Shown here in pieces: positions 1-16,753 of a DNA stretch of 16,753 nt. The notes under the pieces were generated by a model that was not told the DNA's origin, did not search any database, and saw only the letters and a list, made by a program, of their open reading frames with translations. The translations under genes and the position numbers were made by a program. Source of the DNA: Caecitellus pseudoparvulus (Eukaryota > Protista > Bigyra: Bicosoecida); contig CBFFRQ010000183.1 in the NCBI GenBank assembly GCA_965644315.1, positions 1 to 16,753 on the forward strand. The letters are read 5' to 3'. Numbering within the stretch: the first letter of the stretch is position 1; the number at the start of each line of letters is the position of its first letter.

Positions 1-2
1 TC

Positions 3-1220
3 CTGGCTGCCTGTCAGGAAGGGCACCTCGATGTGGTGCGCGAGCTGCTGGCTCTGACGGGCGACCGTGAAGTGGACGTGCATGCTGGGGATCAGAGTGG
101 GCCTGAAGCTGGCTTCCGGGCAGCCTGTGAGCATGGTCACTTTGGTGTGGTGCGTGAGCTGTTGGCTTTGCGTGGACACCGTGAGGTCGACGTGCATGTC
201 GGATCTCAGCGTGGCCCTGAGGTAGGGTTTCGGCTTGCATGCCAGTATGGGCACCTCGATGTGGTTCAAGAGCTGCTGGCTTTGAAAGGTGACCGCAAAG
301 TGGACGTACACGCTGGGCCTGAGGGCGAGTCTGAAGGCGCGTTCATTGCTGCATGTGGAAATGGCCACGTGGACGTAGTGCGAGAGCTGCTGGCTCTACG
401 CAGAGATCGTGCTGTGAATGTAAGCGCTGGCAACAGCATTTCCTTTCTAAGCGCTTGTGAGCAAGGCCACGTGCAGGTTGTGCGTGAGCTGCTAACGCTT
501 ACTGGTAGCCGAGCAGTGGATGTGCATGTGGCGGGCTGGGACAGCGTACCAGAGGCTGCTTTTCGGCGCGCATGTGCTAATGGGCACGTGGATGTGGTGC
601 GCGAGCTGCTGGCTCTGACGGGCGACCGTGAGATCGATGTGCATGCTGGGCGAGAGGACGAGCCTGAAGGCGCATTCATTGCTGCTTGTGGGGGCGGGTA
701 CATTGATGTTGTGCGTGAGCTGCTTGCCCTCAGCGGTGACCGTGCAGTGGACGTACATGCTGGGCTTGGGGGCAAGCCTGAGGGTGGCTTTCGCCTTGCT
801 TGTCAGAAGGGGCATGTCGAGGTTGTGCGCGAGCTGCTGGCGCTAACAGGACATCGAGAAGTGGATGTGCATGGTGGGCCCGATGGCAAGCCTGAGTACG
901 GCTTTCGCCTTGCCTGCAAGTTTGGCCACACGGCTGTGGTGCGTGAGCTGCTGGCTTTGAGCGGGTACCGTGAGGTGGATGTGCATGCTGGGCCGGTGGG
1001 AAAGCCAGACGCTGGTTTCCGGTTTGCTTGCAAGAGTGCTCATGTGGGTGTGATGCGTGAGCTGCTTGGCCTGTCTGGACACCGAGCCATCCCACTCCGA
1101 GCACGCCTTGACGCAGGACAGGTGGCTGTGCAGCCAGCCAAGGATGCGGCCTGGGCCGGCACATGCACCCGCCAGGGCAGGCGCAGCATGTTGCTGCATC
1201 GGGCTGCTGGAGTGAGCTGA
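3..1220 (+). CDS. Ankyrin-repeat protein, type A copy 1 (5' truncated by window edge)
   Basis: Frame open from position 3 (LAACQEGHLDVVRELL...). About 10 repeats of consensus F..AC..GH..VVRELLAL.G.R.VDVHAG, matching the ankyrin helix-turn-helix pattern (A...GH...V..LL). C-terminus ...RQGRRSMLLHRAAGVS is shared with A2 and A3. Confidence 0.88.
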   Translation: MAACQEGHLDVVRELLALTGDREVDVHAGDQSGPEAGFRAACEHGHFGVVRELLALRGHREVDVHVGSQRGPEVGFRLACQYGHLDVVQELLALKGDRKVDVHAGPEGESEGAFIAACGNGHVDVVRELLALRRDRAVNVSAGNSISFLSACEQGHVQVVRELLTLTGSRAVDVHVAGWDSVPEAAFRRACANGHVDVVRELLALTGDREIDVHAGREDEPEGAFIAACGGGYIDVVRELLALSGDRAVDVHAGLGGKPEGGFRLACQKGHVEVVRELLALTGHREVDVHGGPDGKPEYGFRLACKFGHTAVVRELLALSGYREVDVHAGPVGKPDAGFRFACKSAHVGVMRELLGLSGHRAIPLRARLDAGQVAVQPAKDAAWAGTCTRQGRRSMLLHRAAGVS

Positions 1221-1547
1221 TTGCAGTGGGTTTGGCGGCAGGGTGGCCACCGTGAGTGGTGGGGTGCGCTGAGTCCAAGGCTGCACGTAGCAATGCAGGC
1301 TGCCTTGGCCTGTCATGGCCCTGCTTGCCACCAGCCTTTGATCATTCCGTCGGAGTCTGTGCTTGCCCGCCCACTGGCGCGTGCGGTTTCGTCGGCTGGC
1401 TGGAGTACGGGTGACTTGGCTGCAGTGCAGCCCACCGTGTCAAACTTGCAATGCACTGTGTCCATACATGTATGAGGAGCACATAGCTTGAACAGAGAGG
1501 CTCCTGTGTCTATCAGGCGGCCAGCAGTGTCACTTTACATTGCGGCT

Positions 1548-1580
1548 GGAAGTGCGGAAACTGAACCCACCACGCCATGG
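1548..1580 (+). promoter_or_regulatory. Conserved pre-ATG motif (B1)
   Basis: ggaagtgcggaaactgaacccaccacgccATGg; recurs before all five visible ankyrin starts; ends in a Kozak-like gccATGg. Confidence 0.6.
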
Positions 1581-2954
1581 CCTGTGGCAGCGGCGGTGAG
1601 AGGCGGTGGCTGGATCGTTGGACAGCAGCCTGCACCGCCAAGGATGTGGAGAGCATGTTCACACTGCTGCAGGGTGACGCTGATGGCGGCAAGGGAGGCA
1701 TGGGGCCCCTTGAGGCGTCCACCGTGTCACATGCCGCTGCTGTGGCTTGTGACAAGTGTGACGCTGGGGTGTTTCGGGAGCTATCGGGCGTGATTGCGGA
1801 GCGTGGCCTGGGCGCGAAGGCGCTGAGCTTCGTGTACATGGCAGCATGTGCGGGCGGGCATGTGGACGTAGTGCGAGAGCTGCTGGCGCTGACGGGTGAT
1901 CGGGAAGTGGATGTGCATGCTGCGGACGAGGCTGGCTTCCGGTGGGCCTGTGGGAATGGTCACGTAGGCGTGGTGCGAGAGCTGCTGGCACTGAGTCGTG
2001 ATCGGGAGGTAGATGTGCATGCTGCGGACGAAGCTGGCTTCCGGTGGGCCTGTGGCGGAGGGCATGTGGAAGTAGTGCGGGAGCTGTTAGCTTTGAGAGG
2101 TCATCGAACTGTGGATGTGATGGTTGATTTCGGGGATGGTCCCGGGTATGTCTTTCGACTTGCGAGCCAGTATGGTCATTTGGACGTGGTGCGGGAGCTG
2201 TTAGCACTGACGGGTGACCGAGCAGTGGACGTGCATGCTGGGCCTGAGGGCAGGTCTGAGGCTGCCTTCCGGCTTGCTTGCCAGAACGGACATGTGGCTG
2301 TGGTACGTGAGCTGCTTGCGCTGAGTGGTGATCGGGAAGTGGATGTGCACGCTGGTGATCGGGATGGAGCCGAGGCTGGCTTCCGGGCTGCTTGTGAGCA
2401 CGGACACGTGGAAGTGGTTCGAGTCTTGCTGACACTGAAGGGTGATCGGGAGGTGGATGTTCACGCCGGGCCTGACGGCGAAGCTGAGTATACTTTCAGA
2501 CTTGCTTGCGAAAACGGACATGTAGATGTGGTGCGCGAGCTACTGGCATTGAGCGGCCACCGAAGAGTGGATGTGCACGCAGGGAGTTTGGCTCAGCCTG
2601 AGGCTGCATTCCTGGCTGCATGTAGAGGTGGGAGCTTGGGCGTGGTTCGTGAGCTGCTGGCTCTGACGGGCGATCGAGCTGTGGATGTGCATGCGGGGCC
2701 TGAGGGTGTGCCGGATGTTGGCTTCCACTGGGCATGCAAGAATGGACACGTGGACGTGGTGCGCGAGCTACTCGCTCTGACTGGTCCGCGTGAAGTTGAT
2801 GTGCATGCGGGGCGTTGGGGTTGGCCAGAGTATGCTTTTCAGGCTGCCTGTGAGGAAGGGCACGTGGATGTCGTGCGTGTCCTGCTGGCGCTGAGCGGAC
2901 CCCGTGAGATCGACGTGCACGCTGGACCTGAAGGCAAACCAGAGGCTGGCTTCC
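1577..2954 (+). pseudogene. Ankyrin-repeat protein type B copy 1, 5' part; interrupted by the retrotransposon
   Basis: ATG in cacgccATGg context; N-terminus homologous to B2. Homology to B2 stops at ...GKPEAGF (ggcttcc, 2954). Joining 1577-2954 to 8778-8977 gives an open 525-aa frame colinear with B2 (GKPDAGFLLACVDLREEVV). Confidence 0.9.
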
Positions 2955-3128
2955 GAGGTTGCCGGCACCCCAGCCGGCAACCATGTTTCCCGGCAGGAGG
3001 GGCGGCGGGCAGTCCCACGCTAGTGGCACAATTGTCCCCCGCCGCCCCAACGCAGAGTAGACGACGGCAGGACCGGGCATGACAAAACCAGTCATTAGCC
3101 GGCCTCGTCACTCTCTTTCCTTTTTTTT
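2955..3128 (+). repeat. Split direct repeat A, copy 1 (left terminus)
   Basis: gaggttgccggcacccc...ctctctttcc+T8; identical to 8440-8613 by direct comparison (offset 5485). Confidence 0.95.
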
Positions 3129-3132
3129 CGAG

Positions 3133-5214
3133 ATGGCATCGGATGATCCAGCTTCCAGCGACACGGAGGGCGGAAGCTGGGAGGACATCCACGACAAAAT
3201 GATGTCTGTCAACTCCGCCAAGCAAGCCAAGGCGCTCATAACGGAGCAGGAGTTCGAGTACTGGCTGAAGTGGGCGGATTCTGAGGATTTTGGTAAGATG
3301 GAGGCCGCTTGGCGCCTCCGGGAGGTGCCCGAGGGATTCCGGGCAGATCGCATGCGATCCCTCATTGCGGGCAGAGCTTTCCGCCTCCCCGCTGACGGTG
3401 CCCCTCATCGCGCAGGCGGCTCACCACGGGGGCACGGCACGAAGCGAACCCGTCCGCGCGGTGCGAGCAGTGGCACGCCCTACGGCCCGCACCTACCCCC
3501 GCGCCCGACCCAGCCGGACGCAGTCGCAGGCGACCTCCCGCAAGATCCCGCCACAGTGCTTACGTGGTTCCTGCAGAGGGGAGCGACGGTGCCGAGCGAG
3601 GACGTCGCCGTGCAGCTGCAGTTCTACGTGGGCTTGGCAACGGAGGAGACATCGCCGTACGCCCTCTCCGCTTGGCCTCCACGGCGCTTCGCCGCATGGT
3701 GCAGACTCAACGGTATTCCCCCCGACCTCACCCCCGACGACATCGTGATGCATTTGCAGCGGGTCCTGGAGGCCGCGCTGGCGGGCGACGACGACTTTGG
3801 CGACGACGATGCCGGCGCCCCGTTCTTTCCCGTTTTCCCGGGCACCACACCGGATGCCGCCCGGTTACAGCCCCGTGCGGCGGCCCCGGGTCACCCCCGG
3901 CCTCCAAGAGGCACAGGGCGGCCTATAGCCCGCAGCCCCCCTCCCCCGTGGGGCGGCGGAGCCTCGCCGGCAGTCCACCCCGAAGGCGGGTCGGCTGTTT
4001 TCGGTCACATGGGGGAGAACAGCGGTCGGTCGTCGCCAGCCGACGAGGTACTGGTCACTGTAGGCGCGCTGCGGGTCATTGGGCCGACCGCACACCCCTC
4101 GTCGGCGGTGGCCCGGGACCGCCTGTCAGCCTTGGGGGCAGTTTTCGCTGCGGGGACCACAGACGCCTTGACCACGGTGGCTGTCGAGATGGCTGAGGCT
4201 GCTGCACGAGAGGTGCCCGCAGCAACGGGCCCAGTGCCGTCAGGTACGTTCCTGTCCCGCCAGCTCCCCCCCCACTCGCCCCGCGTGCCCGCTCCCGGCG
4301 ACCCGTCCTGGCTCACAGCCCCCGGCGATGAGGTAGCCCCGCCGTCCGCGTCGGTCATGATGGACGACGCTATGGACGTAGTGACTGCTGTACGCCTGGT
4401 GCAAGGGAGGGTGGAAGTTACAGTTGACCCAACCCATCTAGTGGCAGTAACTGGGGCGGGTGCCCTGTCGGCATGCCACATGCTGGGCAACCGTGGGGGC
4501 GCTTGGTGGCTTGCTGCGATGACCAGGGACTTGCTGACGGCGCCTTCCGACGACCTCCACCGCTCCCTCCGAGCGTTCTGGTGGAAGTGGGCGTCCGAGG
4601 TGCCCGCCCTGGCAGACCAGCGGGGCCTGTGCCGAGCCATGGCGTGCGCACTCCTGATCACAATCGCAGTGCGGGCCGTGGCGCAGACCGCCGCTGCGTT
4701 GCCCGAAGGCCAGCGCAGGCGATGGGCCCAGCTGACGTGGGCCTCCTGGGTGGCCACGTTCCGCACTAACGCCACCATTGTCATGATGGCGTCGGCGACG
4801 GGGCAAGCACTGGTGGCCAGCTCGCTGGCGCGCGAGGCATGGGCGGCCGGGGCCGCCGCCACACCGATGCCAGGTGCGGGGGGCGGCCCGGCGCAAACCC
4901 CCGCTCGTGGCCCTCCCGCGGGGCTGTACCGGCAGGACGACCCGAGCACATTCGTGTGGTGCCCCGGGTGCGTCGGATCCGACCGGCGGCGCCGGTCGCT
5001 GGCATCCTGCCCACGCCTGGCCCAGCATGTGGCCCACCTGCGCCGGACCCACACAGTCGGAGGTAAGCCCGCAGAACTTACCCAGGCGCAGGCAGTGGCC
5101 ATGCTGGTGCGCCAGTGGGAGCGGAAGGTGGCATCCAAGGGACGTGACTTCCAGCGGCGCATGCAGCCCCGCGCTGTCACCACGGCCATGGTGGAGGCAG
5201 CTCTCAGCCTCTAG
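3133..5214 (+). CDS. ORF1, Gag-like protein of the retrotransposon
   Basis: Long ORF in the gag position. First ATG after repeat A is at 3133 (MASDDP...); an in-frame upstream ATG at 3079 lies within repeat A. Pro/Ala/Gly-rich with a C-terminal CxxC...HxxxxH motif. Gag call rests on position, not recognised homology. Confidence 0.7.
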   Translation: MASDDPASSDTEGGSWEDIHDKMMSVNSAKQAKALITEQEFEYWLKWADSEDFGKMEAAWRLREVPEGFRADRMRSLIAGRAFRLPADGAPHRAGGSPRGHGTKRTRPRGASSGTPYGPHLPPRPTQPDAVAGDLPQDPATVLTWFLQRGATVPSEDVAVQLQFYVGLATEETSPYALSAWPPRRFAAWCRLNGIPPDLTPDDIVMHLQRVLEAALAGDDDFGDDDAGAPFFPVFPGTTPDAARLQPRAAAPGHPRPPRGTGRPIARSPPPPWGGGASPAVHPEGGSAVFGHMGENSGRSSPADEVLVTVGALRVIGPTAHPSSAVARDRLSALGAVFAAGTTDALTTVAVEMAEAAAREVPAATGPVPSGTFLSRQLPPHSPRVPAPGDPSWLTAPGDEVAPPSASVMMDDAMDVVTAVRLVQGRVEVTVDPTHLVAVTGAGALSACHMLGNRGGAWWLAAMTRDLLTAPSDDLHRSLRAFWWKWASEVPALADQRGLCRAMACALLITIAVRAVAQTAAALPEGQRRRWAQLTWASWVATFRTNATIVMMASATGQALVASSLAREAWAAGAAATPMPGAGGGPAQTPARGPPAGLYRQDDPSTFVWCPGCVGSDRRRRSLASCPRLAQHVAHLRRTHTVGGKPAELTQAQAVAMLVRQWERKVASKGRDFQRRMQPRAVTTAMVEAALSL

Positions 5215-7362
5215 GAGGTGGGCCGGAGCGCGGTGGTGAGAGCGACCACGGGGTACCGGGCCGTGCCCGTGGAGTGGAGGGCTGCCGCCCCGCTCTCGAC
5301 AGACCACCGCGCCATGGCCGTGCTCATCGAATCAATGGTCCAGCAGCTGCATGGGGACCGTTGTTGGACTCCACCGGGGCTCTTCGAGGACATCTTGCGT
5401 GGGGGCTTGGACTGGGGCCCCCACCCCGTGGTCTCATACTGGGGTTGCCAGGAGGCCCACGCTGACGTGTGTCCCGCATGCGGCGAGACCACTTCCAGAT
5501 TACGGCAGCTTGAGCGGTGCGCAGCCATGCGACTGCTCACCGTGGTCACGCTGCGCGGGTGGGACCCCGCTTGGCTGCTGTTCCGCCGCCCCCCGGCAGC
5601 GGCATCCCCGTCCTCGGCATACGTGCTGCAGCCGCACGACGAGCGGGCGGTGGCAGCGGCCTATGACGCCTTCGCGGCTGCGCGCGTGCTGCAGCCGGTC
5701 ACCCCCAGCAGCTGCAGCAGCACCGAAAGATGGGGGGCCAGCCGCTTCTGCCTTCGTTGTCACGACATGGGCCCCCCAGCCGGGCGTCAGCGACGAAGCT
5801 CTGCGACAGTGGGCTGCTGCGAACCCAGGCGAGGCGGTGCAGGCCGCCAGCTCTTCCCGCGCGCCCGCCCGCCCGAGCCGCCTGTTCCGGGCCAAGCAGC
5901 GGGTGGTGTACGATCTGGCAGCCGTCAACCAGGCCTCAGTGAGCCCCCCATTCCACTACCCCACGCTGGAGAGCTGGGCGCTGCGCCTCCCGCCGAACTC
6001 GGACTGTGTTGTCCTGGACGTGGAAGCAGGGTACACGGCCATCCCCATCGCTCCGTCGGGCGCCGGACTGTTCACCATGCTCGCCCAGGGCAGGCCAGCC
6101 TTCCGCATGCTTCGGATGGCCTTCGGGTACAGCCCGGCCGGGGCCATTTTCTGCTTTTTTTCTGGACTTCTGGGCGCCAAGATCGAAGCGGCGTTCCCAG
6201 CAGGGCATGTGGTTGTGTACGTAGACGACGTCGGGCTTGGGGGAGCTACGTTGGGGCCACGGCCATCGATCGTGCCCAAGATAACTCAACTGTTCGAGGA
6301 CGTGGGCTTCCGGGTGTCGCGCAAGAAGACGCAAGGGCCACAGCGCGTCGTTCAGTACTTGGGGATGGTGGTCAGGTGTGCCCCGTGTGGGGTGTACCTT
6401 GAGTGTCCTCAAGCCAAACGAACTCAGCTGCGGTGGCAGCTGGCCGCGGTCCTTAATCGCCTCGGCGCTTGCTCCACCATCCCCAAGCGCGTTTTCGCCG
6501 CGGTCACAGGGCGCTTGCACGGCCTGTCGGCCGTGGTGCCCCACGCAAAACAAACGCTGTCGCTCTTGTACGACACCATGCGCACACACAAGTACCGCGT
6601 CGGCCCCCCGGCGCTCTCGTGCCTGTCCCCCCGGCGTCGCACGGGGCCCTGCGGACCCTCCTTGAGGCCCTCGGTGGGCCGTTATCGACGGGCCCGATGC
6701 GCCCGCTCTCCCCACTGTCAAGCAGGTGGCGCGCCGCCCTCTTTGGCTCGTGCGACGCGTCGGGGGAAGGCGGGCTGGGGGCAACAGTGTCGAGGTGGGC
6801 AGGGCCAGGAGAACGCACAGACTCCGCTTGGTACGCGTCCATGCGCATCCCCGGCACAGCCCCGGGCGAGGAGCTCGTGGGAGCCTCCACGATGCTGGAG
6901 CTGTACGCAATCGCCTTGGCTATGGCAATGGCGCGGCATGTTTTTCCCGAGCCGGGGCCGCTGCTGCTATGCCTAGCTGCGGACAGCCAGGCAGCGGTGG
7001 CGCTGGCGCGACGAGGGTACAGCAAGCACAGCCGTGAACTCACGCGCGTCTGCGGGGTCCTCGAGCGGGTTTCCCGCGTTTTGGACGTCCACTTGGCGCC
7101 TCGGTGGATCCCGAGGAGCCTGAATTGGCGGGCGGACGCCCTCAGCCACCCCGAAAGGGTGGATAGCAGCACACCGGCAGCGCTCGGCCTCCCGCCAGGG
7201 CAACCAGCCGAGCTGGAGGTATCAGCAGGGGGAAGCAGCGCCGCTGAGCGGTGGCATGATGTGTCCCTAGACGTAGGGCCGTCGGAAAAGGGCCGGGGCG
7301 GGCACCGCGTGGATTCACTCAGCTCAACTCTCCGTCGCCCTGCACAGACACACTCTGGATAA
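5215..7362 (+). CDS. Pol: reverse transcriptase + RNase H, split over frames 1/2/1 (frameshifts near 5702-5737 and 6604-6632)
   Basis: Frame 1: RT N-terminal-like GWDPAWLLFRRPP...ERAVAAAYDAFAAARVLQPV. Frame 2: SAFVV...KQRVVYDL, VLDVEAGYTAIPI, MAFGYSPAG, YVDD (6218-6229), GFRVSRKK, QYLGM. Frame 1: RNase H SCDAS, LELYAI, ADSQAAV, WIPRSLNWRADALS. Confidence 0.9.
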
Positions 7363-7382
7363 GGAAGCAGACCTTCTGGCAG

Positions 7383-8282
7383 ATGATCAGGGCCATCCCC
7401 GCGTCCCCGATCAGCAGGATTCACCAACATAGGCTGGCAAAGGGGACGGTGGTCAAGTACGTTCGCGCGGTTGCTGGCCTGATCAGGGCCGCTCCAGCAC
7501 CCCGGGACAGGGCGCGGACCATGGTGGGCATCTTAACGGGCGGCGTGGCCGCAGGCAGATGGGCCCCCCATCGGGCGAAGCAGATCCTGGCGCAATGGGT
7601 CGGTGGTTTTAGGTATCTGGGCCTGCCAATCCCGTCGCTAGCCCCGCTGGGGCTCACAGTCGGCAGCATCTGCCGGGCAATCCGCCGGCTCCACCGAGGG
7701 AGAGGGGAGCAACACCGCCGCCCTATCAGCAAAGAACAAGTCATGGAGGCCATGAAGCGGGCATGGGACGGGCCACACCTCGGGAGGCATGCCCCAACTG
7801 CCGCCGCAGCTATCTACATCGGCTTTCATGGCATGTGCAGGCCGGGAGAGCTCCGGGGCCTGCGATGGGAGGAGTTGCACTTCGGGCGGGCGGGCCCCCT
7901 GCAGTGGGTGGAGGCCAGGGTCACGGATAAAACGCACCTGAGTGCAAACCGCCACATCCAGGTGGTGCGCCAGGCCGAGTGGGCGGGGGCCTTCGACCGC
8001 CTCCGGGAGCAGGCCCGGGACAAGCGGGGAAGCCTGCTCCCAAGGTGGGCGTGGCTCAGCCTGCAAGGCATCCTGAAGGCTGTAGCGGGCGTGTCCTTGG
8101 CCCACCTGAGACCCGGGGGCAATATGTTCTGGACAGGCCGGGCCCCCGACGTCTTGGTGGAGCACGCGGCGGGCTGGGCGGCTGGCTCCCCCACCCGGGC
8201 ACGATACTACACCCAGGGGGGGGGGGAGGGGGCGAGGCTGTGGCACGAGGCCATGACACCCAGGGGAGGAAGCAAGCATTGA
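7383..8282 (+). CDS. Tyrosine recombinase (integrase) of the retrotransposon
   Basis: N-terminal LAKGTVVKY; catalytic-type motifs FHGMCRPGEL (Arg I), TDKT (Lys), AHLRPGG (Arg II), AGW (Trp), RYY (Tyr nucleophile). Confidence 0.9.
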   Translation: MIRAIPASPISRIHQHRLAKGTVVKYVRAVAGLIRAAPAPRDRARTMVGILTGGVAAGRWAPHRAKQILAQWVGGFRYLGLPIPSLAPLGLTVGSICRAIRRLHRGRGEQHRRPISKEQVMEAMKRAWDGPHLGRHAPTAAAAIYIGFHGMCRPGELRGLRWEELHFGRAGPLQWVEARVTDKTHLSANRHIQVVRQAEWAGAFDRLREQARDKRGSLLPRWAWLSLQGILKAVAGVSLAHLRPGGNMFWTGRAPDVLVEHAAGWAAGSPTRARYYTQGGGEGARLWHEAMTPRGGSKH

Positions 8283-8287
8283 AAAGT

Positions 8288-8439
8288 ATTGGCGGGTGCC
8301 GAAAGGAGGCGTCCCCTCCCCCAAGAGATGCAGCGAGCCCTGGTGGCCGCTGGCATAGAGGGGGGAGGGGACGGCCTCGAGGCGGGCCCAGTTCAATGCA
8401 TTTCGATTGCCACGCACAACGCACCAACACGAGGGAACC
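8288..8439 (+). repeat. Split direct repeat B, copy 1
   Basis: attggcgggtgccgaaagg...acacgagggaacc, 152 bp, identical to 8626-8777; starts 5 nt after the YR stop. Confidence 0.95.
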
Positions 8440-8625
8440 GAGGTTGCCGGCACCCCAGCCGGCAACCATGTTTCCCGGCAGGAGGGGCGGCGGGCAGTCC
8501 CACGCTAGTGGCACAATTGTCCCCCGCCGCCCCAACGCAGAGTAGACGACGGCAGGACCGGGCATGACAAAACCAGTCATTAGCCGGCCTCGTCACTCTC
8601 TTTCCTTTTTTTTTTCTTTTTCTCG
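8440..8625 (+). repeat. Split direct repeat A, copy 2 (with longer pyrimidine tail)
   Basis: Identical to 2955-3128, then T10-C-T5-CTCG instead of T8-CG. Confidence 0.95.
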
Positions 8626-8777
8626 ATTGGCGGGTGCCGAAAGGAGGCGTCCCCTCCCCCAAGAGATGCAGCGAGCCCTGGTGGCCGCTGGCATAGAGGG
8701 GGGAGGGGACGGCCTCGAGGCGGGCCCAGTTCAATGCATTTCGATTGCCACGCACAACGCACCAACACGAGGGAACC
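8626..8777 (+). repeat. Split direct repeat B, copy 2 (right terminus)
   Basis: Identical to 8288-8439 (offset 338); followed directly by host ankyrin sequence. Confidence 0.95.
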
Positions 8778-8977
8778 TCCTTGCCTGTGTGGACCTGCGT
8801 GAGGAAGTGGTGCGGGAGCTGCTTGGCCTCACTGGGCACCGAGCCATTTCCGTCCAGACACGTCATCGAGCGGGCGAGTTCGCTGTGCAGCCTGGCAAGG
8901 ACGCGGTGTGGGGTGGCACCAGCACCCGGCAGGGTCGCAGGGCTATGGTGCTGCTGCGGTCTGCGGTGAGGGCGTGA
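8778..8977 (+). pseudogene. Ankyrin-repeat protein type B copy 1, displaced 3' part
   Basis: tccttgcctgtgtggacctgcgtgaggaa...gtgagggcgtga matches B2 13519-13718; encodes LACVDLREEVVRELL...RSAVRA*. Confidence 0.9.
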
Positions 8978-9513
8978 GAGCTACCGCGGACACGGGCGGG
9001 CCAAACGTTGGCGTGTCTGGCGGGCCAGGCTGCATGCTGCACCGGGGGGGTCTCCACGAGCAGAGTCAGCAGTGGGATGGTTGTTGTGCGGCGAGGGATT
9101 GGAGATTTGAGGTGCCTGCGTCGCTGGGAGGCTGTGGCTTGAGCACAGGTAGTGGTGAGTGTGAGTTCTGGGCGGGCCCCGTGGCTGGGCCGTGGCTTGG
9201 CGGGGTGTAGTGCAGGGCTCCCAGGCAGGCAGGGGTGCCATGGCGTGTGACAGTGCTTGGGCATGGTGGGTGGCAGTGCTGGTGGGGTGAGACGTGGCAG
9301 CGGGGTCAGCCCACGGTGCCCTGGAGCGCTGTGTCGGAGCCTGGTATCATTGGGAGTTCAGACAGCAATGCAGACCAGGGAGGTTGGTCAGTGTCTTGAC
9401 TTTGTCAAAAACTTCACCCCCATCTTCAACATATGTCGGAAATATGAATGCAGAAAGTCGTGCGGTGCTGGGCTGAGCTGCCTGTGCCACTTGCGCGGGT
9501 GAGTTTGGTTGGC

Positions 9514-9553
9514 AAGTGCGGAAAGTGCGGAAAGTGGAGCCACCACGCCATGG
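9514..9553 (+). promoter_or_regulatory. Conserved pre-ATG motif (A2), with 9-bp internal duplication
   Basis: aagtgcggaaagtgcggaaagtggagccaccacgccATGg. Confidence 0.6.
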
Positions 9554-11724
9554 CCGATGGCAGCGAGAGGCCGTCATTGGCGGGGCGATGGAAGGCAGCA
9601 TGTGATGATGAGGATGCAGATGCGCTACTGAGTATACTTGGGGAGTGTGGGGATGGGGCAGGCGGGGGGCTGGGTGGGTTGTCAAGTGCGGAGACAACGG
9701 CTGGCTTTTTTGTTGCTTGCAAGGTAGGGCACGTTGGGCTGCTGCGTGAGGTGTTGGCGTTGGAGGGGGAGGTTGTTATGGATGTGCACGCTGGAGACGA
9801 GGATGGGCCTGAGGCTGGCTTCCGGTTTGCTTGTCGTAATGGCCATGCTGATGCGGTGCGGGAGCTGCTGGCTCTGACGGGTGACCGTGAGATCAATGTG
9901 CATGCTGGGCCAGAGGGTTATCCTGAGGCAGGGTTGCAGGATGCCTGTGAGTATGGGCACGTCGACGTGGTTCGAGAGCTGTTGGCTTTGACTGGACATC
10001 GAGAGGTTGACGTGCACGTGGTGTCTGAGGGCGAGCCTGAGTCCATATTGATGGCTGCCTGCTTCAATGGGCATACGGATGTGCTGCGTGAACTGTTGGC
10101 TTTGTCCGGCCATCGAGCAGTGGACGTGCATGCGGCATTCAAAGGCTATCCCGAGGCTGCGTTCAGGTTTGCCTGCCAGAGGGGACATGCGGCTGTGGTA
10201 TGTGAGCTTTTATCTTTGTCAGGCGACCGCGCCGTTGATGTGCATGCAGGTGATATGTGTGGTCCCGAGGCTGGCTTGTGCGCTGCATGCGAGAATGGAC
10301 ATGTCAACGTGGTGCGCGAGCTTCTGGCTTTGACCGGGCCTCGTGAAGTGGACGTGCATGCAGGGCCCATGGGGTATCCTGAGGCTGGCTTTCGGGCAGC
10401 CTGTGAGAGTGGACACCTTGATGTGGTGCGTGAACTGTTGGCTTTGTGTGGACACCGGGAGGTTGACGTGCATGCCGGATCCCTGTGTGGCCCTGAGGCA
10501 GGTTTCCAGCGTGCATGCCAGTATGGGCACGTGTCTGTAGTGCGTGAGCTCCTGGCTTTGAAAGGTGACCGTGAAGTGGATGTACACGCTGGCCCTGAGG
10601 GTGGGTCTGAAGGCGCATTCATCGCTGCATGCGGAAATGGCCACGTGGACGTGGTGCGCGAGTTGCTGGCCCTTTGCGGGCATCGCGCTGTGAATGTGCA
10701 CGCCTGTCGCAATAATGCCTTCCTAGGCGCTTGTGAGCATGGCCACGTGCAGGTTGTACGTGAGCTTCTGATGCTAACTGGTAGCCAAACAGTAGATGTG
10801 CATGTGGCGGGCTGGGACAGGGTACCAGAGGCTGGATTTCGGCGCGCATGTGCCTATGGGCACATTGAGGTGGTGCGCGAGCTGCTCGCCCTGAGGGGCG
10901 ACCGTGAGATCGACGTGCATGCTGGGCGAGAGGACGAGCCTGAAGCCGCATTTATTGCTGCCTGTGGGAGCGGGCACATTGATGTTGTGCGTGAGCTGCT
11001 GGCTTTGACGGGCGCTCGGGAAGTGGACGTGCATACTGGGCGAGAGGACGAGCCTGAAGCCGCATTTATTGCTGCCTGTGGGAGCGGGCACATTGATGTT
11101 GTGCGTGAGCTGCTGGCTTTGACGGGCGCTCGGGAAGTGGACGTGCATACTGGGCGAGAGGACGAGCCTGAAGCCGCATTTATTGCTGCCTGTGGGAGCG
11201 GGCACATTGATGTTGTGCGTGAGCTGCTGGCTTTGACGGGCGCTCGGGAAGTGGACGTTCACGCTGGGCTGGGAGGCAAGCCTGAGGGTGGCTTTCGCCT
11301 TGCTTGTCAGAGGGGGCATGTGGAGGTTGTGCGCGAGCTGCTGGCGCTAACAGGACATCGAGAAGTGGATGTGCATGGTGGGCCCGATGGCAAGCCTGAG
11401 TATGGCTTTCGCCTTGCCTGTAAATTTGGACACACGGCTGTGGTGCGCGAGCTGCTGGCTTTGAGCGGGCACCGTGAGGTGGACGTGTGTGCTGGGCCTG
11501 CAGGAAAGTCACATGCTGGTTTCCGGTTTGCTTGCAAGAATGCCCATGTGGATGTGATGCGTGAGCTGCTTAGCCTGTCTGGACACCGAGCCATCCCACT
11601 CCGAGCACGCCTTGACGCAGGACAGGTGGCTGTGCAGCCGGCCAAAGATGCGGCCTGGGGCGGCACGTGCACTCGTCAGGGCAGGCGCAGCATGTTGCTG
11701 CATCGGGCTGCTGGAGTGAGCTGA
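9550..11724 (+). CDS. Ankyrin-repeat protein type A copy 2 (724 aa, ~17 repeats)
   Basis: Start chosen at the conserved cacgccATGg (MADGSERPSL...), not the track's 9448. Continuous ORF of ankyrin-like repeats with the type-A C-terminus. Confidence 0.9.
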   Translation: MADGSERPSLAGRWKAACDDEDADALLSILGECGDGAGGGLGGLSSAETTAGFFVACKVGHVGLLREVLALEGEVVMDVHAGDEDGPEAGFRFACRNGHADAVRELLALTGDREINVHAGPEGYPEAGLQDACEYGHVDVVRELLALTGHREVDVHVVSEGEPESILMAACFNGHTDVLRELLALSGHRAVDVHAAFKGYPEAAFRFACQRGHAAVVCELLSLSGDRAVDVHAGDMCGPEAGLCAACENGHVNVVRELLALTGPREVDVHAGPMGYPEAGFRAACESGHLDVVRELLALCGHREVDVHAGSLCGPEAGFQRACQYGHVSVVRELLALKGDREVDVHAGPEGGSEGAFIAACGNGHVDVVRELLALCGHRAVNVHACRNNAFLGACEHGHVQVVRELLMLTGSQTVDVHVAGWDRVPEAGFRRACAYGHIEVVRELLALRGDREIDVHAGREDEPEAAFIAACGSGHIDVVRELLALTGAREVDVHTGREDEPEAAFIAACGSGHIDVVRELLALTGAREVDVHTGREDEPEAAFIAACGSGHIDVVRELLALTGAREVDVHAGLGGKPEGGFRLACQRGHVEVVRELLALTGHREVDVHGGPDGKPEYGFRLACKFGHTAVVRELLALSGHREVDVCAGPAGKSHAGFRFACKNAHVDVMRELLSLSGHRAIPLRARLDAGQVAVQPAKDAAWGGTCTRQGRRSMLLHRAAGVS
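10912..11258 (+). repeat. Three tandem 114-bp ankyrin units, identical except one base
   Basis: Units start at 10912, 11026 and 11140 (GREDEPEAAFIAACGSGHIDVVRELLALTGAREVDVH); g10921 versus a11035/a11149. Confidence 0.92.
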
Positions 11725-12685
11725 TTGCAGTGGGTTTGGCGGCATGGTGGCCACCATGGGCCGTGGAGTGCGCTGAGTCCACGGCTGCACGTAGCAATAC
11801 AGGCTGCCTTGGCCTGTCATGGCCCTGCCCACCACTGGCCTTTGCTCATTCCGTTGGAGTCTGTGCTCGCGCGCCCGCTGGCGCGTGCGGTCTCAGTGAC
11901 TGGCTCCGGGCAGCGCCCGATCCGTGTGCACAGGGTGGCTGGCTGGGGGGTTAACGACTTGGCCGCAGTGCAGGCCTCCAAGCCAAACTTGCACCGCACG
12001 GTGCACATGCGTGCACAAGGAGCACATGACTTGCGTAGAGGCTCCTGTGTGTGTCAGTCGGTCAGCAATGTCATCGTGCAGTGGGGTGGAAGTGCGGAAA
12101 CTGGAGCCACCACGCCATGGCCAATGGCAGCGGCGGTGAGAGGCGGTGGCTGGATCGCTGGACAGCAGCTTGTACCGCCAAGGATGTGGAGGGCATGTTC
12201 ATGCTGCTGAAGGATGACGCTGGTGGCGACAAGGGAGGCATGGGGCCCCAGGAGGCGTCCACCGTGTCACATGCCGCTGCTGTGGCTTGTGACCAGTGTG
12301 ACGCTGGGGTGTTTCGGGAGCTATGGGGCGTGATTGCGGAGCGTGGCCTGGGCGTGAAGGCGCTGAGCTTCGTGTACATGGCAGCATGTGCGGGCGGGCA
12401 CGTGGACGTAGTGCGCGAGCTGCTGGCGCTGACGGGCGATCGAGCGGTGGATGTGCATGCTGAGGATCAGAATGGACCAGAGGCTGCCTTTCGGTTTGCC
12501 TGTGAGAGGGGCCATGTGGCAGTGGTGCGCGAACTGTTAGCTCTGAGTGGTAGTCGGGAAGTTGATGTGCACGCTGGTGACCGGGATGGAGCTGAGGCTG
12601 CATTTCGGTGTGCCTGCGAAAATGGACATGCCCATGTTGTACGAGAGCTACTAGGTTTGAGCGGTCAGCGCGAGGTGGATGTTCA
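11251..12685 (+). repeat. Near-identical segmental duplication (A 3' end + spacer + B 5' end), partner 15079-16513
   Basis: Offset 3828; only about five substitutions seen by eye over ~1.43 kb, including the non-coding spacer. Confidence 0.9.
12088..12120 (+). promoter_or_regulatory. Conserved pre-ATG motif (B2)
   Basis: ggaagtgcggaaactggagccaccacgccATGg. Confidence 0.6.
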
Positions 12686-13718
12686 TGCTGGACTTTGGGG
12701 TGGCCCAGAAGCCGCCTTTCGCCTTGCGTGCATGCGAGGGCATGTGGACGTGGTGCGGGAGCTGCTGGAGCTGAAGGGGCATCGTGAAATCAATGTGCAC
12801 GCTGGCGATAGCAGCTTTCCGGAGGAAGGATTTCGGCTTGCCTGTAAGTTTGGTCACGTGGCTGTGGTGCGCGAGCTGTTGGCTCTGAGTGGTGGTCGGG
12901 AAGTTGACGTGCACGCGGTTGACCGGGATGGAGCTGAGGCTGGTTTCCGGGCTGCTTGTGAGCACGGGCATGTGGAAGTGGTTCAAGTCTTGCTGACACT
13001 GAAGGGTGATCGCGAGGTAGATGTTCACGCCGGGCCTGACGGCGAAGCTGAGTATACTTTCAGAGTTGCTTGTGAAAACGGACATGCAGATGTAGTGCGC
13101 GAGCTACTGGCACTGAGCGGCCATCGAAAGGTGGATGTGCGCGCAGGGAGTTTGGCTCAGCCTGAGGCCGCCTTCCTGGCCGCGTGCAGAGGTGGGAGTT
13201 TGGACGTGGTTCGTGAGCTGCTGGCTCTGACGGGCGATCGAGCTGTGGATGTTCACGCCGGACCTGAGGGTGTGTCTGACGTTGGCTTCCAGCTTGCCTG
13301 CAAGAATGGCCATGTGGACGTAGTGCGAGAATTACTCGCTCTGACTGGTCCGCGTGAAGTTGATGTGCATGCGGGGCGTTGGGACTGGCCAGAGTATGCT
13401 TTTCAGGCTGCCTGTGAGGAAGGGCACGTGGATGTGGTTCGCGAGCTGCTTGCGCTGAGCGGACCCCGCGAGATCGACGTGCACGCTGGACCTGAAGGCA
13501 AGCCAGACGCTGGCTTCCTCCTTGCCTGTGTGGACCTGCGTGAGGAAGTGGTGCGGGAGCTGCTTGGCCTCACTGGGCACCGAGCCATTTCTGTCCAGAC
13601 ACGTCATCGAGCGGGCGAGTTTGCGGTGCAGCCTGGCAAGGACGCGGTGTGGGGTGGCACAAGCACCCGGCAGGGTCGCAGGGCCATGGTGCAGCTGCGG
13701 TCTGCGGTGAGGGCGTGA
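12117..13718 (+). CDS. Ankyrin-repeat protein type B copy 2 (533 aa, ~11 repeats), intact; empty-site paralog of B1
   Basis: Start at conserved cacgccATGg (MANGSGGERRWLDRW...); continuous ORF ending RSAVRA*. Confidence 0.9.
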   Translation: MANGSGGERRWLDRWTAACTAKDVEGMFMLLKDDAGGDKGGMGPQEASTVSHAAAVACDQCDAGVFRELWGVIAERGLGVKALSFVYMAACAGGHVDVVRELLALTGDRAVDVHAEDQNGPEAAFRFACERGHVAVVRELLALSGSREVDVHAGDRDGAEAAFRCACENGHAHVVRELLGLSGQREVDVHAGLWGGPEAAFRLACMRGHVDVVRELLELKGHREINVHAGDSSFPEEGFRLACKFGHVAVVRELLALSGGREVDVHAVDRDGAEAGFRAACEHGHVEVVQVLLTLKGDREVDVHAGPDGEAEYTFRVACENGHADVVRELLALSGHRKVDVRAGSLAQPEAAFLAACRGGSLDVVRELLALTGDRAVDVHAGPEGVSDVGFQLACKNGHVDVVRELLALTGPREVDVHAGRWDWPEYAFQAACEEGHVDVVRELLALSGPREIDVHAGPEGKPDAGFLLACVDLREEVVRELLGLTGHRAISVQTRHRAGEFAVQPGKDAVWGGTSTRQGRRAMVQLRSAVRA

Positions 13719-14260
13719 GAGCTGCCGCGGACACGGGCGGGCCAAGCGTTGGCGTGTCCGGCGGGCCAGGCTGCACGCTGCACCGGGGGGTTCGCCCTGA
13801 GCAGAGTGAGCATGGAGATGGGTGTTGTGCAGTGAGGGATGGGAGTCACATTGGGCTGGCGTGGCTGGGAGGCTGTGGCTTGAGCGCGGGTGGTGGGGAG
13901 TGTGACTTCTGGGCGGACCCCGTGGCTGGGCCGTGGCGGGGCGGGACGTAGTGCAGGGGTACCAGGCAGGCAGGGGTGCCATGGCGTGTGACAGTGCTTG
14001 GGCATGGCGGGTGGCAGTGCTGGTGGGGTGAGACGTGGCAGTGGGGTCAGCCCACGGTGCCCTGGAGCGCTGTGTCGGAGCCTGGTATCGTTGGGAGTTC
14101 AGATAGCAATGCAGACCAGGGAGGTTGGTCAGTGTCTTGACTTTGTCAAAAGCACCGCCCCCATCTTCAAAGCATGTCTGTCATGGGGCTGCAGAAAGTC
14201 GTGCGGTGCTGGGCTGAGCCGCCTGTGCCGCTTGTGTGGGCGAGTTGGTTGGTGTGTGTG

Positions 14261-14293
14261 GGAAGTGCGGAAAGTGGAGCCACCACGCCATGG
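14261..14293 (+). promoter_or_regulatory. Conserved pre-ATG motif (A3)
   Basis: ggaagtgcggaaagtggagccaccacgccATGg. Confidence 0.6.
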
Positions 14294-15552
14294 CCGATGG
14301 CAGCGAGAGGCCGTCATTGGTGGGGCGATGGAAGGCAGCATGTGATGGTGAGCAGGCAGATGTACTGCTGAGGATACTGGGGGAGTGTGGGGATGGGGCA
14401 GGCGGGGGCCTGGGAGGGTTGTCAAGTGTCGAGACGACGGCTGGCTTTTTGGTGGCTTGCAGGGTAGGGCACATTTGGCTGCTGCGTGCGCTGCTGGCAT
14501 TGGAGGGGGAGCTTGCTGTGGATGTGCACGTGGCAGAACGTTTGGGGCCTGAGGCTGGCTTCCGGGCTGCCTGTTACTATGGGCATGTGGCTGTGGTGCG
14601 CGAGCTTTTGGAGTTGAGTGGGAGCCGTTGTGTGGATGTGCATGCTGGGCCTGAGGGTGAACCTGAGGCTGGTTTCCGGATGGCCTGCCAGGAAGGCCAG
14701 TTGCATGTAGTGCGGGAGCTGCTGGCTCTACGCGGAAATCGAGCCGTGAATGTGCACGCTTGCAACAACTATGCCTTCCGGTTGGCTTGTGACCATGGCC
14801 ACTTGCAAGTTGTGCGTGAGCTGCTGTTGGTTACCGGCAGCCAAGCAGTGGATGTGCATGTGGAGGGCTGGGACAGCGTACCAGAGGCTGCTTTTCGGCG
14901 CGCATGTGTTAATGGGCACATTGACGTGGTTCGTGAGCTGCTGTCTCTGACTGGCGACTGTGAGATCGATGTGCATGCTGGGCGAGAGGACGAGCCTGAA
15001 GCGGCATTTATTGCTGCTTGTGGGGGCGGGTACATTGATGTTGTGCGTGAGCTGCTTGCCCTCAGCGGTGACCGTGCAGTGGACGTTCACGCTGGGCTGG
15101 GAGGCAAGCCTGAGGGTGGCTTTCGCCTTGCTTGTCAGAGGGGGCATGTGGAGGTTGTGCGCGAGCTGCTGGCGCTAACAGGACATCGAGAAGTGGATGT
15201 GCATGGTGGGCCCGATGGCAAGCCTGAGTATGGCTTTCGCCTTGCCTGTAAATTTGGACACACGGCTGTGGTGCGCGAGCTGCTGGCTTTGAGCGGGCAT
15301 CGTGAGGTGGACGTGTGTGCTGGGCCTGCAGGAAAGTCACATGCTGGTTTCCGGTTTGCTTGCAAGAATGCCCATGTGGATGTGATGCGTGAGCTGCTTG
15401 GCCTGTCTGGACACCGAGCCATCCCACTCCGAGCACGCCTTGACGCAGGACAGGTGGCTGTGCAGCCGGCCAAAGATGCGGCCTGGGGCGGCACGTGCAC
15501 TCGTCAGGGCAGGCGCAGCATGTTGCTGCATCGGGCTGCTGGAGTGAGCTGA
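14290..15552 (+). CDS. Ankyrin-repeat protein type A copy 3 (420 aa, ~9 repeats)
   Basis: Same N- and C-terminal caps as A2; 304 aa (8 x 38) shorter. Confidence 0.9.
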   Translation: MADGSERPSLVGRWKAACDGEQADVLLRILGECGDGAGGGLGGLSSVETTAGFLVACRVGHIWLLRALLALEGELAVDVHVAERLGPEAGFRAACYYGHVAVVRELLELSGSRCVDVHAGPEGEPEAGFRMACQEGQLHVVRELLALRGNRAVNVHACNNYAFRLACDHGHLQVVRELLLVTGSQAVDVHVEGWDSVPEAAFRRACVNGHIDVVRELLSLTGDCEIDVHAGREDEPEAAFIAACGGGYIDVVRELLALSGDRAVDVHAGLGGKPEGGFRLACQRGHVEVVRELLALTGHREVDVHGGPDGKPEYGFRLACKFGHTAVVRELLALSGHREVDVCAGPAGKSHAGFRFACKNAHVDVMRELLGLSGHRAIPLRARLDAGQVAVQPAKDAAWGGTCTRQGRRSMLLHRAAGVS

Positions 15553-15915
15553 TTGCAGTGGGTTTGGCGGCATGGTGGCCACCATGGGCCGTGGAGTGCG
15601 CTGAGTCCACGGCTGCACGTAGCAATACAGGCTGCCTTGGCCTGTCATGGCCCTGCCCACCACTGGCCTTTGCTCATTCCGTTGGAGTCTGTGCTCGCGC
15701 GCCCGCTGGCGCGTGCGGTCTCAGTGACTGGCTCCGGGCAGCGCCCGATCCGTGTGCACAGGGTGGCTGGCTGGGGGGTTAACGACTTGGCCGCAGTGCA
15801 GGCCTCCAAGCCAAACTTGCACCGCACGGTGCACATGCATTCACAAGGAGCACATGACTTGCGTAGAGGCTCCTGTGTGTGTCAGTCGGTCAGCAATGTC
15901 ATCGTGCAGTGGGGT

Positions 15916-15948
15916 GGAAGTGCGGAAACTGGAGCCACCACGCCATGG
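15916..15948 (+). promoter_or_regulatory. Conserved pre-ATG motif (B3)
   Basis: ggaagtgcggaaactggagccaccacgccATGg. Confidence 0.6.
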
Positions 15949-16753
15949 CCAATGGCAGCGGCGGTGAGAGGCGGTGGCTGGATCGCTGGACAGCAGCTTG
16001 TACCGCCAAGGATGTGGAGGGCATGTTCATGCTGCTGAAGGATGACGCTGGTGGCGACAAGGGAGGCATGGGGCCCCAGGAGGCGTCCACCGTGTCACAT
16101 GCCGCTGCTGTGGCTTGTGACCAGTGTGACGCTGGGGTGTTTCGGGAGCTATGGGGCGTGATTGCGGAGCGTGGCCTGGGCGTGAAGGCGCTGAGCTTCG
16201 TGTACATGGCAGCATGTGCGGGCGGGCACGTGGACGTAGTGCGCGAGCTGCTGGCACTGACGGGCGATCGAGCGGTGGATGTGCATGCTGAGGATCAGAA
16301 TGGACCAGAGGCTGCCTTTCGGTTTGCCTGTGAGAGGGGCCATGTGGCAGTGGTGCGCGAACTGTTAGCTCTGAGTGGTAGTCGGGAAGTTGATGTGCAC
16401 GCTGGTGACCGGGATGGAGCTGAGGCTGCATTTCGGTGTGCCTGCGAAAATGGACATGCCCATGTTGTACGAGAGCTACTAGGTTTGAGCGGTCAGCGCG
16501 AGGTGGATGTTCACGCCGGGCCTGACGGCGAAGCTGAGTATACTTTCAGGCTTGCTTGCGAAAACGGACATGCAGATGTGGTGCGCGAGCTACTGGCACT
16601 GAGCGGCCATCGAAAGGTGGATGTGCGCGCAGGGAGTTTGGCTCAGCCTGAGGCTGCCTTCTTGGCTGCATGCAGAGGTGGGAGTTTGGATGTGGTTCGG
16701 TTGCTGTAATCTCTAAGCGGCGATCGAGCTGTGGATGTGCATGCGGGGCCGGA
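15945..16753 (+). pseudogene. Ankyrin-repeat type B copy 3 with premature in-frame TAA (16707-16709); runs off window
   Basis: Nearly identical to the B2 5' end and lacks 342 bp of B2. After VVRLL* the repeat continues in frame (SLSGDRAVDVHAGP). Confidence 0.75.

What the first reader, a model, noticed from the sequence alone, without database searches (positions are those of the whole stretch)
1..16753. Alternating A/B ankyrin gene array resembling a natural DARPin-like variable-binder library
Seen: two paralogous gene types strictly alternate (A-B-A-B-A-B). The 38-aa repeat has a near-fixed scaffold (GH..VVRELLAL.G.R.VDVH) while the loop after VDVH and the first-helix positions vary strongly (GDQSGP, GSQRGP, GREDEP, GRWGWP, GLWGGP, VSEGEP, AFKGYP; RW/RL/IA/HW/QD before AC; QY/EH/KF/MR/YY after). 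Repeat number varies (A about 17 vs 9). Established: the beta-hairpin loop and inner helix form the ankyrin binding surface, the positions randomised in DARPins; canonical repeats are 33 aa. Inference: a paired, rapidly diversifying recognition system (immune sensor/restriction factor or effector) in a microbial eukaryote, possibly acting as A/B pairs.
Basis: partly seen in the sequence, partly recalled or inferred. Interest (0 to 1): 0.8.

Follow-up and report, generated by a model that had tools for sequence, protein, structure and literature searches.

The report
Shuffling ankyrin gene array with retrotransposon
A marine single-celled eukaryote carries a tandem family of ankyrin-repeat binding proteins that change by gaining, losing and swapping whole repeats and share an unusual scaffold with a giant-virus genome, but the array shows no sign of positive selection or obligate A/B pairing, and a fresh retrotransposon fills a third of the window.

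Summary
The array is real: six intronless ankyrin genes in A-B-A-B-A-B order, mostly 38-aa repeats, fixed scaffold, variable inner helix and hairpin, A2 with 17 repeats and A3 with 9. The alternation comes from duplication of an A+B cassette; related loci are A-A-A-A or B-B-B, so pairing is not obligate. Change comes from repeat gain, loss, replacement and mosaic recombination. The closest relatives and a 99% identical retrotransposon are in Mariana Trench metagenomes, where Caecitellus dominates the eukaryotes, so the host is probably a bicosoecid flagellate (inferred). A giant-virus MAG carries about ten ankyrin genes with the same scaffold in a 34-aa form and a similar tail. Best reading: a birth-and-death family of stand-alone cytosolic binders, plausibly used in conflict with giant viruses; the function is untested. 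It resembles fungal NLR ankyrin repeats and the Bodo saltans virus ankyrin accordion but is neither.

The parts
1..1220 (+). Gene A1, 5' end outside the window; at least 10 ankyrin repeats plus C-terminal tail
1577..2954 (+). Gene B1, 5' piece: 87-aa N-cap and 10 repeats (two of 34 aa). The ORF runs on into the retrotransposon and stops at 3082, so the last repeat and tail are lost
2953..8777 (+). Ngaro-type (DIRS order) tyrosine-recombinase retrotransposon, about 5.8 kb, inserted in B1. A CC dinucleotide is shared by the target and the element's own B/A junction; no other target-site duplication
   Evidence: 99.3% identical copy L013
2953..3128 (+). Split direct repeat A, first copy (176 nt, 100% identical to the second)
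3133..5214 (+). ORF1, 693 aa, no Pfam or PHROG match; Gag-like by position only
   Evidence: PMC8547959
5218..7362 (+). ORF2 region: reverse transcriptase (YVDD) and RNase H-like domain. In the window it is in pieces in different frames; the differences from the uninterrupted 732-aa ORF of L013 lie at 5702, 5735, 6604 (C/G runs) and 7290
   Evidence: RVT_1 E=1e-7
7383..8282 (+). ORF3, tyrosine recombinase-like, 299 aa; R153, K183, H241, R243, W265 and Y276 are conserved with a 49% identical relative
   Evidence: PHROG integrase E=9e-7; alignment
8288..8439 (+). Split direct repeat B, first copy (152 nt)
8438..8613 (+). Split direct repeat A, second copy
8626..8777 (+). Split direct repeat B, second copy (100% identical to the first)
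8777..8977 (+). Gene B1, 3' piece: last repeat and tail, 97% identical to the end of B2
9526..9552 (+). Conserved upstream motif TGCGGAAA...CCACCACGCC-ATG, also at 1553, 12093, 14266 and 15921 and in related loci; probable core promoter or start context, one per gene
9550..11724 (+). Gene A2, intact, 724 aa: 53-aa N-cap, 17 repeats, tail
10954..11258 (+). Perfect recent triplication of one 114-nt repeat inside A2
12117..13718 (+). Gene B2, intact, 533 aa: 87-aa N-cap, 11 repeats, tail
14290..15552 (+). Gene A3, intact, 420 aa, 9 repeats; a mosaic whose sixth repeat starts like A1 and continues like A2
14914..16513 (+). Block 97.9% identical to 11086-12685 (end of A, spacer, start of B): recent cassette duplication or conversion
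15945..16753 (+). Gene B3, runs off the window; lacks three repeats (342 nt, in frame) relative to B2; in-frame TAA at 16707-16709

Best explanation
A lineage-specific, birth-and-death family of stand-alone ankyrin-repeat binding proteins in a marine heterotrophic protist, probably a Caecitellus-like bicosoecid. Each gene has its own upstream motif, an N-cap of class A or B, a run of near-identical-scaffold 38-aa repeats and a basic helical tail. Because repeats are about 70-75% identical in DNA and in frame, unequal crossing-over and gene conversion add, delete and swap whole repeats (shown), and duplicate whole genes or the A+B cassette (shown). This changes the order of hairpin loops and inner-helix residues on the concave face, hence the binding surface (inferred from the fold). 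Point change at those sites is tolerated but not driven (shown: dN/dS 0.55-0.85). Copies die by nonsense change or Ngaro insertion (shown). The most likely job is to bind proteins of intracellular parasites, above all giant viruses, as inhibitor, decoy or adaptor through the tail (inferred; about even odds). I put the evolutionary mechanism at about 0.85 and the conflict function at about 0.5.
For: Fold. Repeat map with position-specific equivalents, replaced middle repeats, a triplication, a 3-repeat deletion and mosaics. Cassette duplication. Same behaviour at related loci, 4-10 repeats per gene, single-type arrays. Selection. Host: relatives sit beside eIF3c, AFG1, V-SNARE, HSP70; 99.3% identical Ngaro in SRR8404393, a 2017 Mariana Trench run; Caecitellus is 18-59% of hadal eukaryotes there (PMC7848797). 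Conflict hint: GVMAG-S-1103017-74 encodes about ten ankyrin genes, the best of whose repeats carry 80-100% of the 18 fixed scaffold residues, against 30-55% for ordinary ankyrins, and a similar W..RR..R tail. Precedents: PMC4986451, PMC5871332.
Against: No positive selection was found, although fungal NLR ankyrins show it in a similar analysis. There is no sensor-to-effector domain in the window proteins. No expression, ligand or strain data. Host-virus tail homology is not significant by profile comparison. No viral marker gene was seen in the stretches fetched, so the viral label rests on IMG/VR and UniRef and on a different CpG composition. The host name rests on sample composition, not on a marker gene.
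Confidence: 0.55

Rival explanations
1. One reading: a DARPin-like immune library under diversifying selection, with A and B working as obligate pairs (sensor and helper).
For: Variation is concentrated on the binding face. A and B N-caps are old, well separated classes (100/100). A and B alternate three times. Deep divergence and recombination reduce the power of dN/dS tests; the six most variable sites, picked after the fact, give 0.85 with an interval reaching about 1.1.
Against: No class above 1. Loops are conserved between equivalent repeats. Related arrays are A-only (L010) or B-type only (L008, L009, L011). B1 and B3 are broken while their A neighbours look intact. All genes are head-to-tail, each with its own upstream motif.
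Confidence: 0.12
2. Largely neutral turnover: a recombination-prone repeat family with an ordinary cellular scaffold or adaptor role, or acquired from a giant virus and now drifting. Variable sites are simply the surface positions that any ankyrin tolerates.
For: dN/dS never above 1. Two of six copies are broken. Low GC3 (0.57-0.59 against 0.77-0.80 in the Ngaro and 0.77 in a housekeeping gene of a relative) fits weak codon selection. Back-face sites vary too.
Against: The scaffold is under strong purifying selection (0.04-0.12), tails too (0.08-0.24), so many copies are kept functional. The family is expanded at many loci in several samples and a virus keeps about ten copies, which is the pattern of conflict genes (inference).
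Confidence: 0.25
3. Substrate receptors of a ubiquitin ligase, as with poxvirus ANK/F-box, ASB or FEM1 proteins: repeats pick substrates and the conserved tail docks on a cullin adaptor.
For: Ankyrin array plus short conserved C-terminal helix. Giant-virus F-box/ankyrin proteins are among the top fold matches. A RING protein lies among the viral ankyrin genes.
Against: The tail matches no F-box, SOCS or VHL model in Pfam, PHROG or PDB and finds only this family among 1.84 billion proteins. FEM1 hits cover only the ankyrin part.
Confidence: 0.15
4. Part of the pattern is an assembly artefact (collapsed or duplicated repeats, long-read errors).
For: Blocks 99-100% identical; perfect triplication in A2; the Ngaro frameshifts fall mostly in homopolymer runs.
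Against: Most copies differ by 5-20% with a synonymous bias, and the same architecture occurs in independent short-read assemblies. An artefact could explain the triplication, the B3 stop or the frameshifts, not the family.
Confidence: 0.05

Closest known systems
Fungal NLR ankyrin repeats with high internal conservation (Podospora anserina Pa_3_8560, Pa_2_8180; PMC4986451)
   Same: Homogenised scaffold, repeat-number variation, variable residues on the inner helix and beta-hairpin, diversification by repeat shuffling.
   Different: No NACHT/NB-ARC or effector domain here; repeats are mostly about 70% rather than over 85% identical; no positively selected sites found; genes are in tandem arrays; 38-aa unit.
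Bodo saltans virus ankyrin accordion (PMC5871332)
   Same: Head-to-tail tandem ankyrin genes with 4-17 repeats, recent duplications, proposed host-virus conflict role.
   Different: That is a viral genome; here the relatives lie among cellular housekeeping genes and the array hosts a retrotransposon. No fused fragments of viral enzymes.
Ankyrin genes of giant-virus MAG GVMAG-S-1103017-74 (IMG/VR; unstudied)
   Same: Same unusual scaffold, with about four extra residues after helix 2 relative to the canonical repeat, multicopy, similar W..RR..R tail.
   Different: 34-aa short-hairpin form; different N-terminus; no A/B caps; GC 66-67% and CpG not depleted.
DARPins (engineered)
   Same: Fixed framework with N- and C-caps and variable positions in hairpin and inner helix; top structural matches.
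   Different: 33-aa unit, lacks the 4-residue insert; diversity there is made by randomisation. Here there is no dedicated diversifier and loops are conserved by position.
Ngaro retrotransposons of Cafeteria burkhardae (PMC8547959)
   Same: About 6 kb, GC-rich, A1-ORFs-B1-A2-B2 split direct repeats, ORF1, RT/RNase H, tyrosine recombinase.
   Different: No Cafeteria protein was retrieved by the recombinase search, so it is a separate family; this copy sits in a host ankyrin gene, not in a virophage.

Membership tests
Ankyrin-repeat protein | Helix-turn-helix-hairpin repeats stacking into a solenoid; Pfam Ank match | tested here: met
   Ank_2 E=1e-50, 5e-49, 2e-24; model pLDDT 88, pTM 0.84; DARPin and ankyrin fold matches
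Ankyrin-repeat protein | Canonical 33-aa unit with TPLH motif | tested here: not met
   38-aa (some 34, 39) unit; TPLH replaced by xGFR/xAFR; about four extra residues after helix 2
Fungal-type NLR with hypervariable ANK repeats | Central NACHT or NB-ARC domain and N-terminal effector | tested here: not met
Fungal-type NLR with hypervariable ANK repeats | High internal conservation, 85% or more over 100 aa | tested here: not met
   Tandem matches 66-74% in DNA, except the B1 34-aa pair (83%) and the A2 triplication (93%)
Fungal-type NLR with hypervariable ANK repeats | Positive selection on concave-face sites | tested here: not met
Power is limited by one genome and by recombination
Fungal-type NLR with hypervariable ANK repeats | Repeat-number polymorphism between isolates | not testable with these tools
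   Variation is shown between paralogues only; no second assembly of this locus was found
Paired sensor/helper receptors | Conserved obligate linkage of the two types | tested here: not met
   L010 is A-A-A-A; L009 is B-B-B; L011 has two B-type genes
Paired sensor/helper receptors | Physical A-B complex | not testable with these tools
   The structure tool takes single unchanged chains only
ANK/F-box, ASB or FEM1 ubiquitin-ligase receptors | C-terminal F-box/PRANC, SOCS or VHL box | tested here: not met
   No match for the tail in Pfam, PHROG or PDB; tail profile finds only this family
Ngaro retrotransposon (DIRS order) | Split direct repeats A1-ORFs-B1-A2-B2 | tested here: met
   176-nt and 152-nt repeats, 100% identical, in this order
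Ngaro retrotransposon (DIRS order) | Reverse transcriptase followed by RNase H | tested here: met
   RVT_1 above the curated cut-off; D-E-D-D motifs present and weak RNase HI match E=0.026
Ngaro retrotransposon (DIRS order) | Tyrosine recombinase instead of DDE integrase | tested here: met
   PHROG integrase families E=9e-7 and 2e-3; R, K, H-x-R, W, Y conserved. The motif is H-x-R, not H-x-x-R; no Pfam or PDB hit; fold model too poor to use
Ngaro retrotransposon (DIRS order) | Insertion by crossover at a short shared sequence, no target-site duplication | tested here: met
   CC shared by the empty target in B2 and the element's B/A junction
Ngaro retrotransposon (DIRS order) | Placement in the Ngaro clade rather than PAT/TOC1 by RT phylogeny | not tested
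   No named reference sequences were returned by the tools; PAT-like elements share the repeat layout (own knowledge)

The most novel reading that the evidence does not exclude
A bicosoecid flagellate and a giant virus use the same private ankyrin scaffold against each other. The host extended the binding hairpin (34 to 38 aa) and generates a combinatorial repertoire of stand-alone antiviral binders by recombining position-specific repeat modules, with diversity selected at the level of repeat order rather than codons: a natural, recombination-driven binder library in a protist.
Probability: 0.2. Interest if true: 0.8.

Novelty: new variant of a known kind. Interest (0 to 1): 0.5.

Why it matters
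Antiviral defence in protists is almost unknown beyond virophages. A family with identifiable intact members, a mapped shuffling mechanism and a scaffold shared with a giant-virus genome gives concrete candidates to test in bicosoecids, the group of the Cafeteria-CroV-mavirus model. The 38-aa scaffold with a longer hairpin is a natural alternative framework for binder design. The Ngaro is a new, recently active family with a cleanly resolved insertion site. On the other side, ankyrin arrays that expand and shuffle are already known in fungi and giant viruses, and the striking parts of the first claim (positive selection, A/B pairing) did not hold.

Tried and rejected
Exact look-up of B2: not on record. 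Host naming through AFG1 of a related locus: no named relative above about 40%. eIF3c of that locus matches mammals far better than Trypanosoma, which argues against a kinetoplastid. No close relatives of A3 in prokaryotic genomes; none of the tail alignment, upstream motif or recombinase in IMG/VR. The metagenome scan gave one short 34-aa-type locus. No Rfam match. The recombinase model had pLDDT 44, so no fold search was run on it. Host against viral tail by hhalign matched only the last repeat. The two top hits of the big search are unrelated tandem-repeat proteins with summed scores and were rejected. The ~550-aa N-terminal domain fused to such repeats in relatives matches nothing. Paper searches found nothing on Caecitellus ankyrins or the MAG. 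A-to-B repeat exchange: the longest exact shared stretch is 26 nt in scaffold, so recent exchange is within types. An A+B complex could not be predicted.
Full report
1. What is in the window. Six ankyrin genes lie head to tail on the + strand with no introns evident: A1 (5' end missing, to 1220), B1 (from 1577), A2 (9550-11724, 17 repeats), B2 (12117-13718, 11 repeats), A3 (14290-15552, 9 repeats) and B3 (from 15945, off the end). A genes start with a 53-aa cap and B genes with an 87-aa cap; both end in a degenerate repeat and a related tail of about 45 aa. Pfam finds only ankyrin families. The AlphaFold model of A3 is a confident ankyrin solenoid (pLDDT 88, pTM 0.84) whose best PDB matches are DARPins and ankyrins; best viral matches are giant-virus ankyrins. 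Against consensus ankyrins, the two residues after AC are positions 13 and 14 of the inner helix, the loop after VDVH is the hairpin, and about four extra residues follow helix 2.

2. Positions 2953-8777 are not ankyrin DNA. They hold split direct repeats in the order A1, ORFs, B1, A2, B2, each pair 100% identical, a 693-aa ORF1, a reverse transcriptase (RVT_1) with RNase H-like motifs, and a 299-aa ORF matching phage integrases. This is the layout of Ngaro elements in Cafeteria burkhardae (PMC8547959). It interrupts B1 after its tenth repeat. The empty site is preserved in B2, and the only shared sequence is a CC that is also the element's own B/A junction, as expected for tyrosine-recombinase integration of a circle (mechanism from established knowledge). 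A 99.3% identical copy with an uninterrupted 732-aa RT-RNase H ORF is in SRR8404393. The window copy differs by one- or two-base indels, mostly in C/G runs, which may be read errors or real slippage. B3 lacks three repeats relative to B2 and has an in-frame stop at 16707-16709. So only A2, B2 and A3 are complete and intact.

3. A/B alternation. The A-to-B spacers are 84-99.5% identical, the B-to-A spacers 89%, and 11086-12685 is 97.9% identical to 14914-16513: the unit of duplication is the A+B cassette, which by itself gives strict alternation. A and B caps are old classes (100/100 support), but related loci hold four A-type genes in a row (L010) or only B-type genes (L008, L009, L011). Obligate pairing is therefore not supported.

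4. How the genes change. Each repeat near the C-terminal end has a clear equivalent in the other copies (85-100% DNA identity), while repeats in the N-terminal half are replaced by unrelated ones (best match about 70-75%). A2 has a perfect triplication, B2 repeat 5 resembles repeat 2, B3 fuses repeat 3 to repeat 6, and A3 switches from A1-like to A2-like within one repeat. L009 shows the same mosaics. Recent exchange between A and B is not evident.

5. Selection. The six most variable concave sites, chosen after the fact, give 0.85 (about 0.65-1.1); the core scaffold gives 0.04. A free site class settles at 0.82, not above 1. In 12 independent pairs of equivalent repeats (dS 0.30), the variable sites have 0.42, the loop 0.35 and the rest 0.17 (Fisher p=5e-4). 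The binding face evolves 2.5-4.5 times faster than the rest but is still mostly under purifying selection. Caveats: one genome, deep divergence, recombination between repeats, and a poorly resolved repeat tree. Fungal NLR ankyrins do show positively selected sites in a similar repeat-level analysis (PMC4986451).

6. Host. The word search returned 177 relatives, the closest unnamed. Those with the same caps that I traced come from ENA assemblies labelled ZHEN20-1 and sit in tandem arrays or beside eIF3c, AFG1, a kinase, a V-SNARE and HSP70, so the family is cellular and eukaryotic. They are 63-71% identical in DNA to the window and share the upstream motif. No named genome is close. SRR8404393 is from a 2017 Mariana Trench cruise (PMC7265257); I recall the ZHEN20-1 samples as Mariana water too but did not verify it. 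Caecitellus makes up 18-59% of hadal eukaryotes there (PMC7848797). A Caecitellus-like bicosoecid is thus the likely host, by inference only.

7. Virus link. A 34-aa short-hairpin form of the same scaffold is widespread in unnamed contigs and in GVMAG-S-1103017-74, where about ten ankyrin genes occur in the stretches fetched. The best viral repeats carry 80-100% of the 18 fixed residues, ordinary ankyrins 30-55%. Host and viral tails align on an invariant W and two nearly invariant R, though profile comparison does not make this significant. The tail finds only this family among 1.84 billion proteins. I saw no viral marker gene in the fetched stretches; direction of transfer is unknown.

8. 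Mechanism. Shown: ankyrin fold, constrained scaffold, relaxed binding face, repeat-level gain, loss and replacement, cassette duplication, gene death. Inferred: soluble intracellular proteins (no signal or membrane segment is apparent by eye) whose concave face binds protein partners, with specificity changed by reordering modules. Speculative, about even odds: the partners are proteins of giant viruses or other intracellular parasites.

9. Verdict. The pattern is real and works like the repeat-shuffling seen in fungal NLR ankyrins and the BsV accordion (PMC5871332), but fails membership of NLRs, paired receptors and ANK/F-box proteins. It is a new variant of a known kind: an undescribed 34/38-aa ankyrin subfamily shared by an unsequenced protist lineage and a giant-virus MAG, here hit by a new Ngaro-type element. 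Interest 0.5, down from 0.8. Steps left out: B1 pieces, the B3 stop and ORF2 pieces were not joined; no A+B complex could be modelled.

Noticed in passing
window 2953-8777: Recently inserted Ngaro-type retrotransposon of a new family; a 99.3% identical copy is in a Mariana Trench run (L013) and a 45-49% identical sister family in SRR24000141/2 (L018, L019).
   Followed up: yes
L013 1-5276: The contig runs from the second A repeat straight back into ORF1: either a collapsed assembly or a circular or tandem form of the element.
   Followed up: partly
window 1553, 9526, 12093, 14266, 15921; L008 197; L009 440, 1503, 2677; L006 10267: Conserved motif TGCGGAAA about 20-25 nt before each ATG, followed by a Kozak-like CCACCACGCC; a candidate core promoter for the family.
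   Followed up: partly
window ankyrin genes and B-to-A spacers: Strong strand bias (G over C, T over A, also at fourfold sites) and low GC3 compared with the retrotransposon and with housekeeping genes of relatives; C/T differences between copies are enriched before G (60 of 112).
   Followed up: partly
L003 692-3409; L005 10001-12700; proteins P0001, P0002, P0009, P0019, P0027, P0048, P0100: A second subfamily fuses a conserved unknown domain of about 550 aa in front of the 38-aa repeats; a candidate effector. No Pfam, PDB or PADLOC match.
   Followed up: partly
L012, L014-L017 (GVMAG-S-1103017-74): High-GC giant-virus MAG with about ten ankyrin genes of this scaffold, a RING protein and a family of large unknown paralogues; two contigs start with the same 5' sequence.
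   Followed up: partly
P0024, P0025: 34-aa-type relatives with Sel1-like repeats in front of the ankyrin array.
   Followed up: no
L006 6393-9893: AGC-type kinase with DEP and START domains next to an ankyrin gene in a relative.
   Followed up: no
window 4960-5037: Cys/His cluster near the end of ORF1 (CPGC...C...H), a possible zinc knuckle.
   Followed up: no
window 1577-1837 against 12117-12377: The B-type N-cap differs between B1 and B2 by 13 nonsynonymous and 4 synonymous changes (ratio about 1.1), higher than the repeats; small numbers.
   Followed up: no
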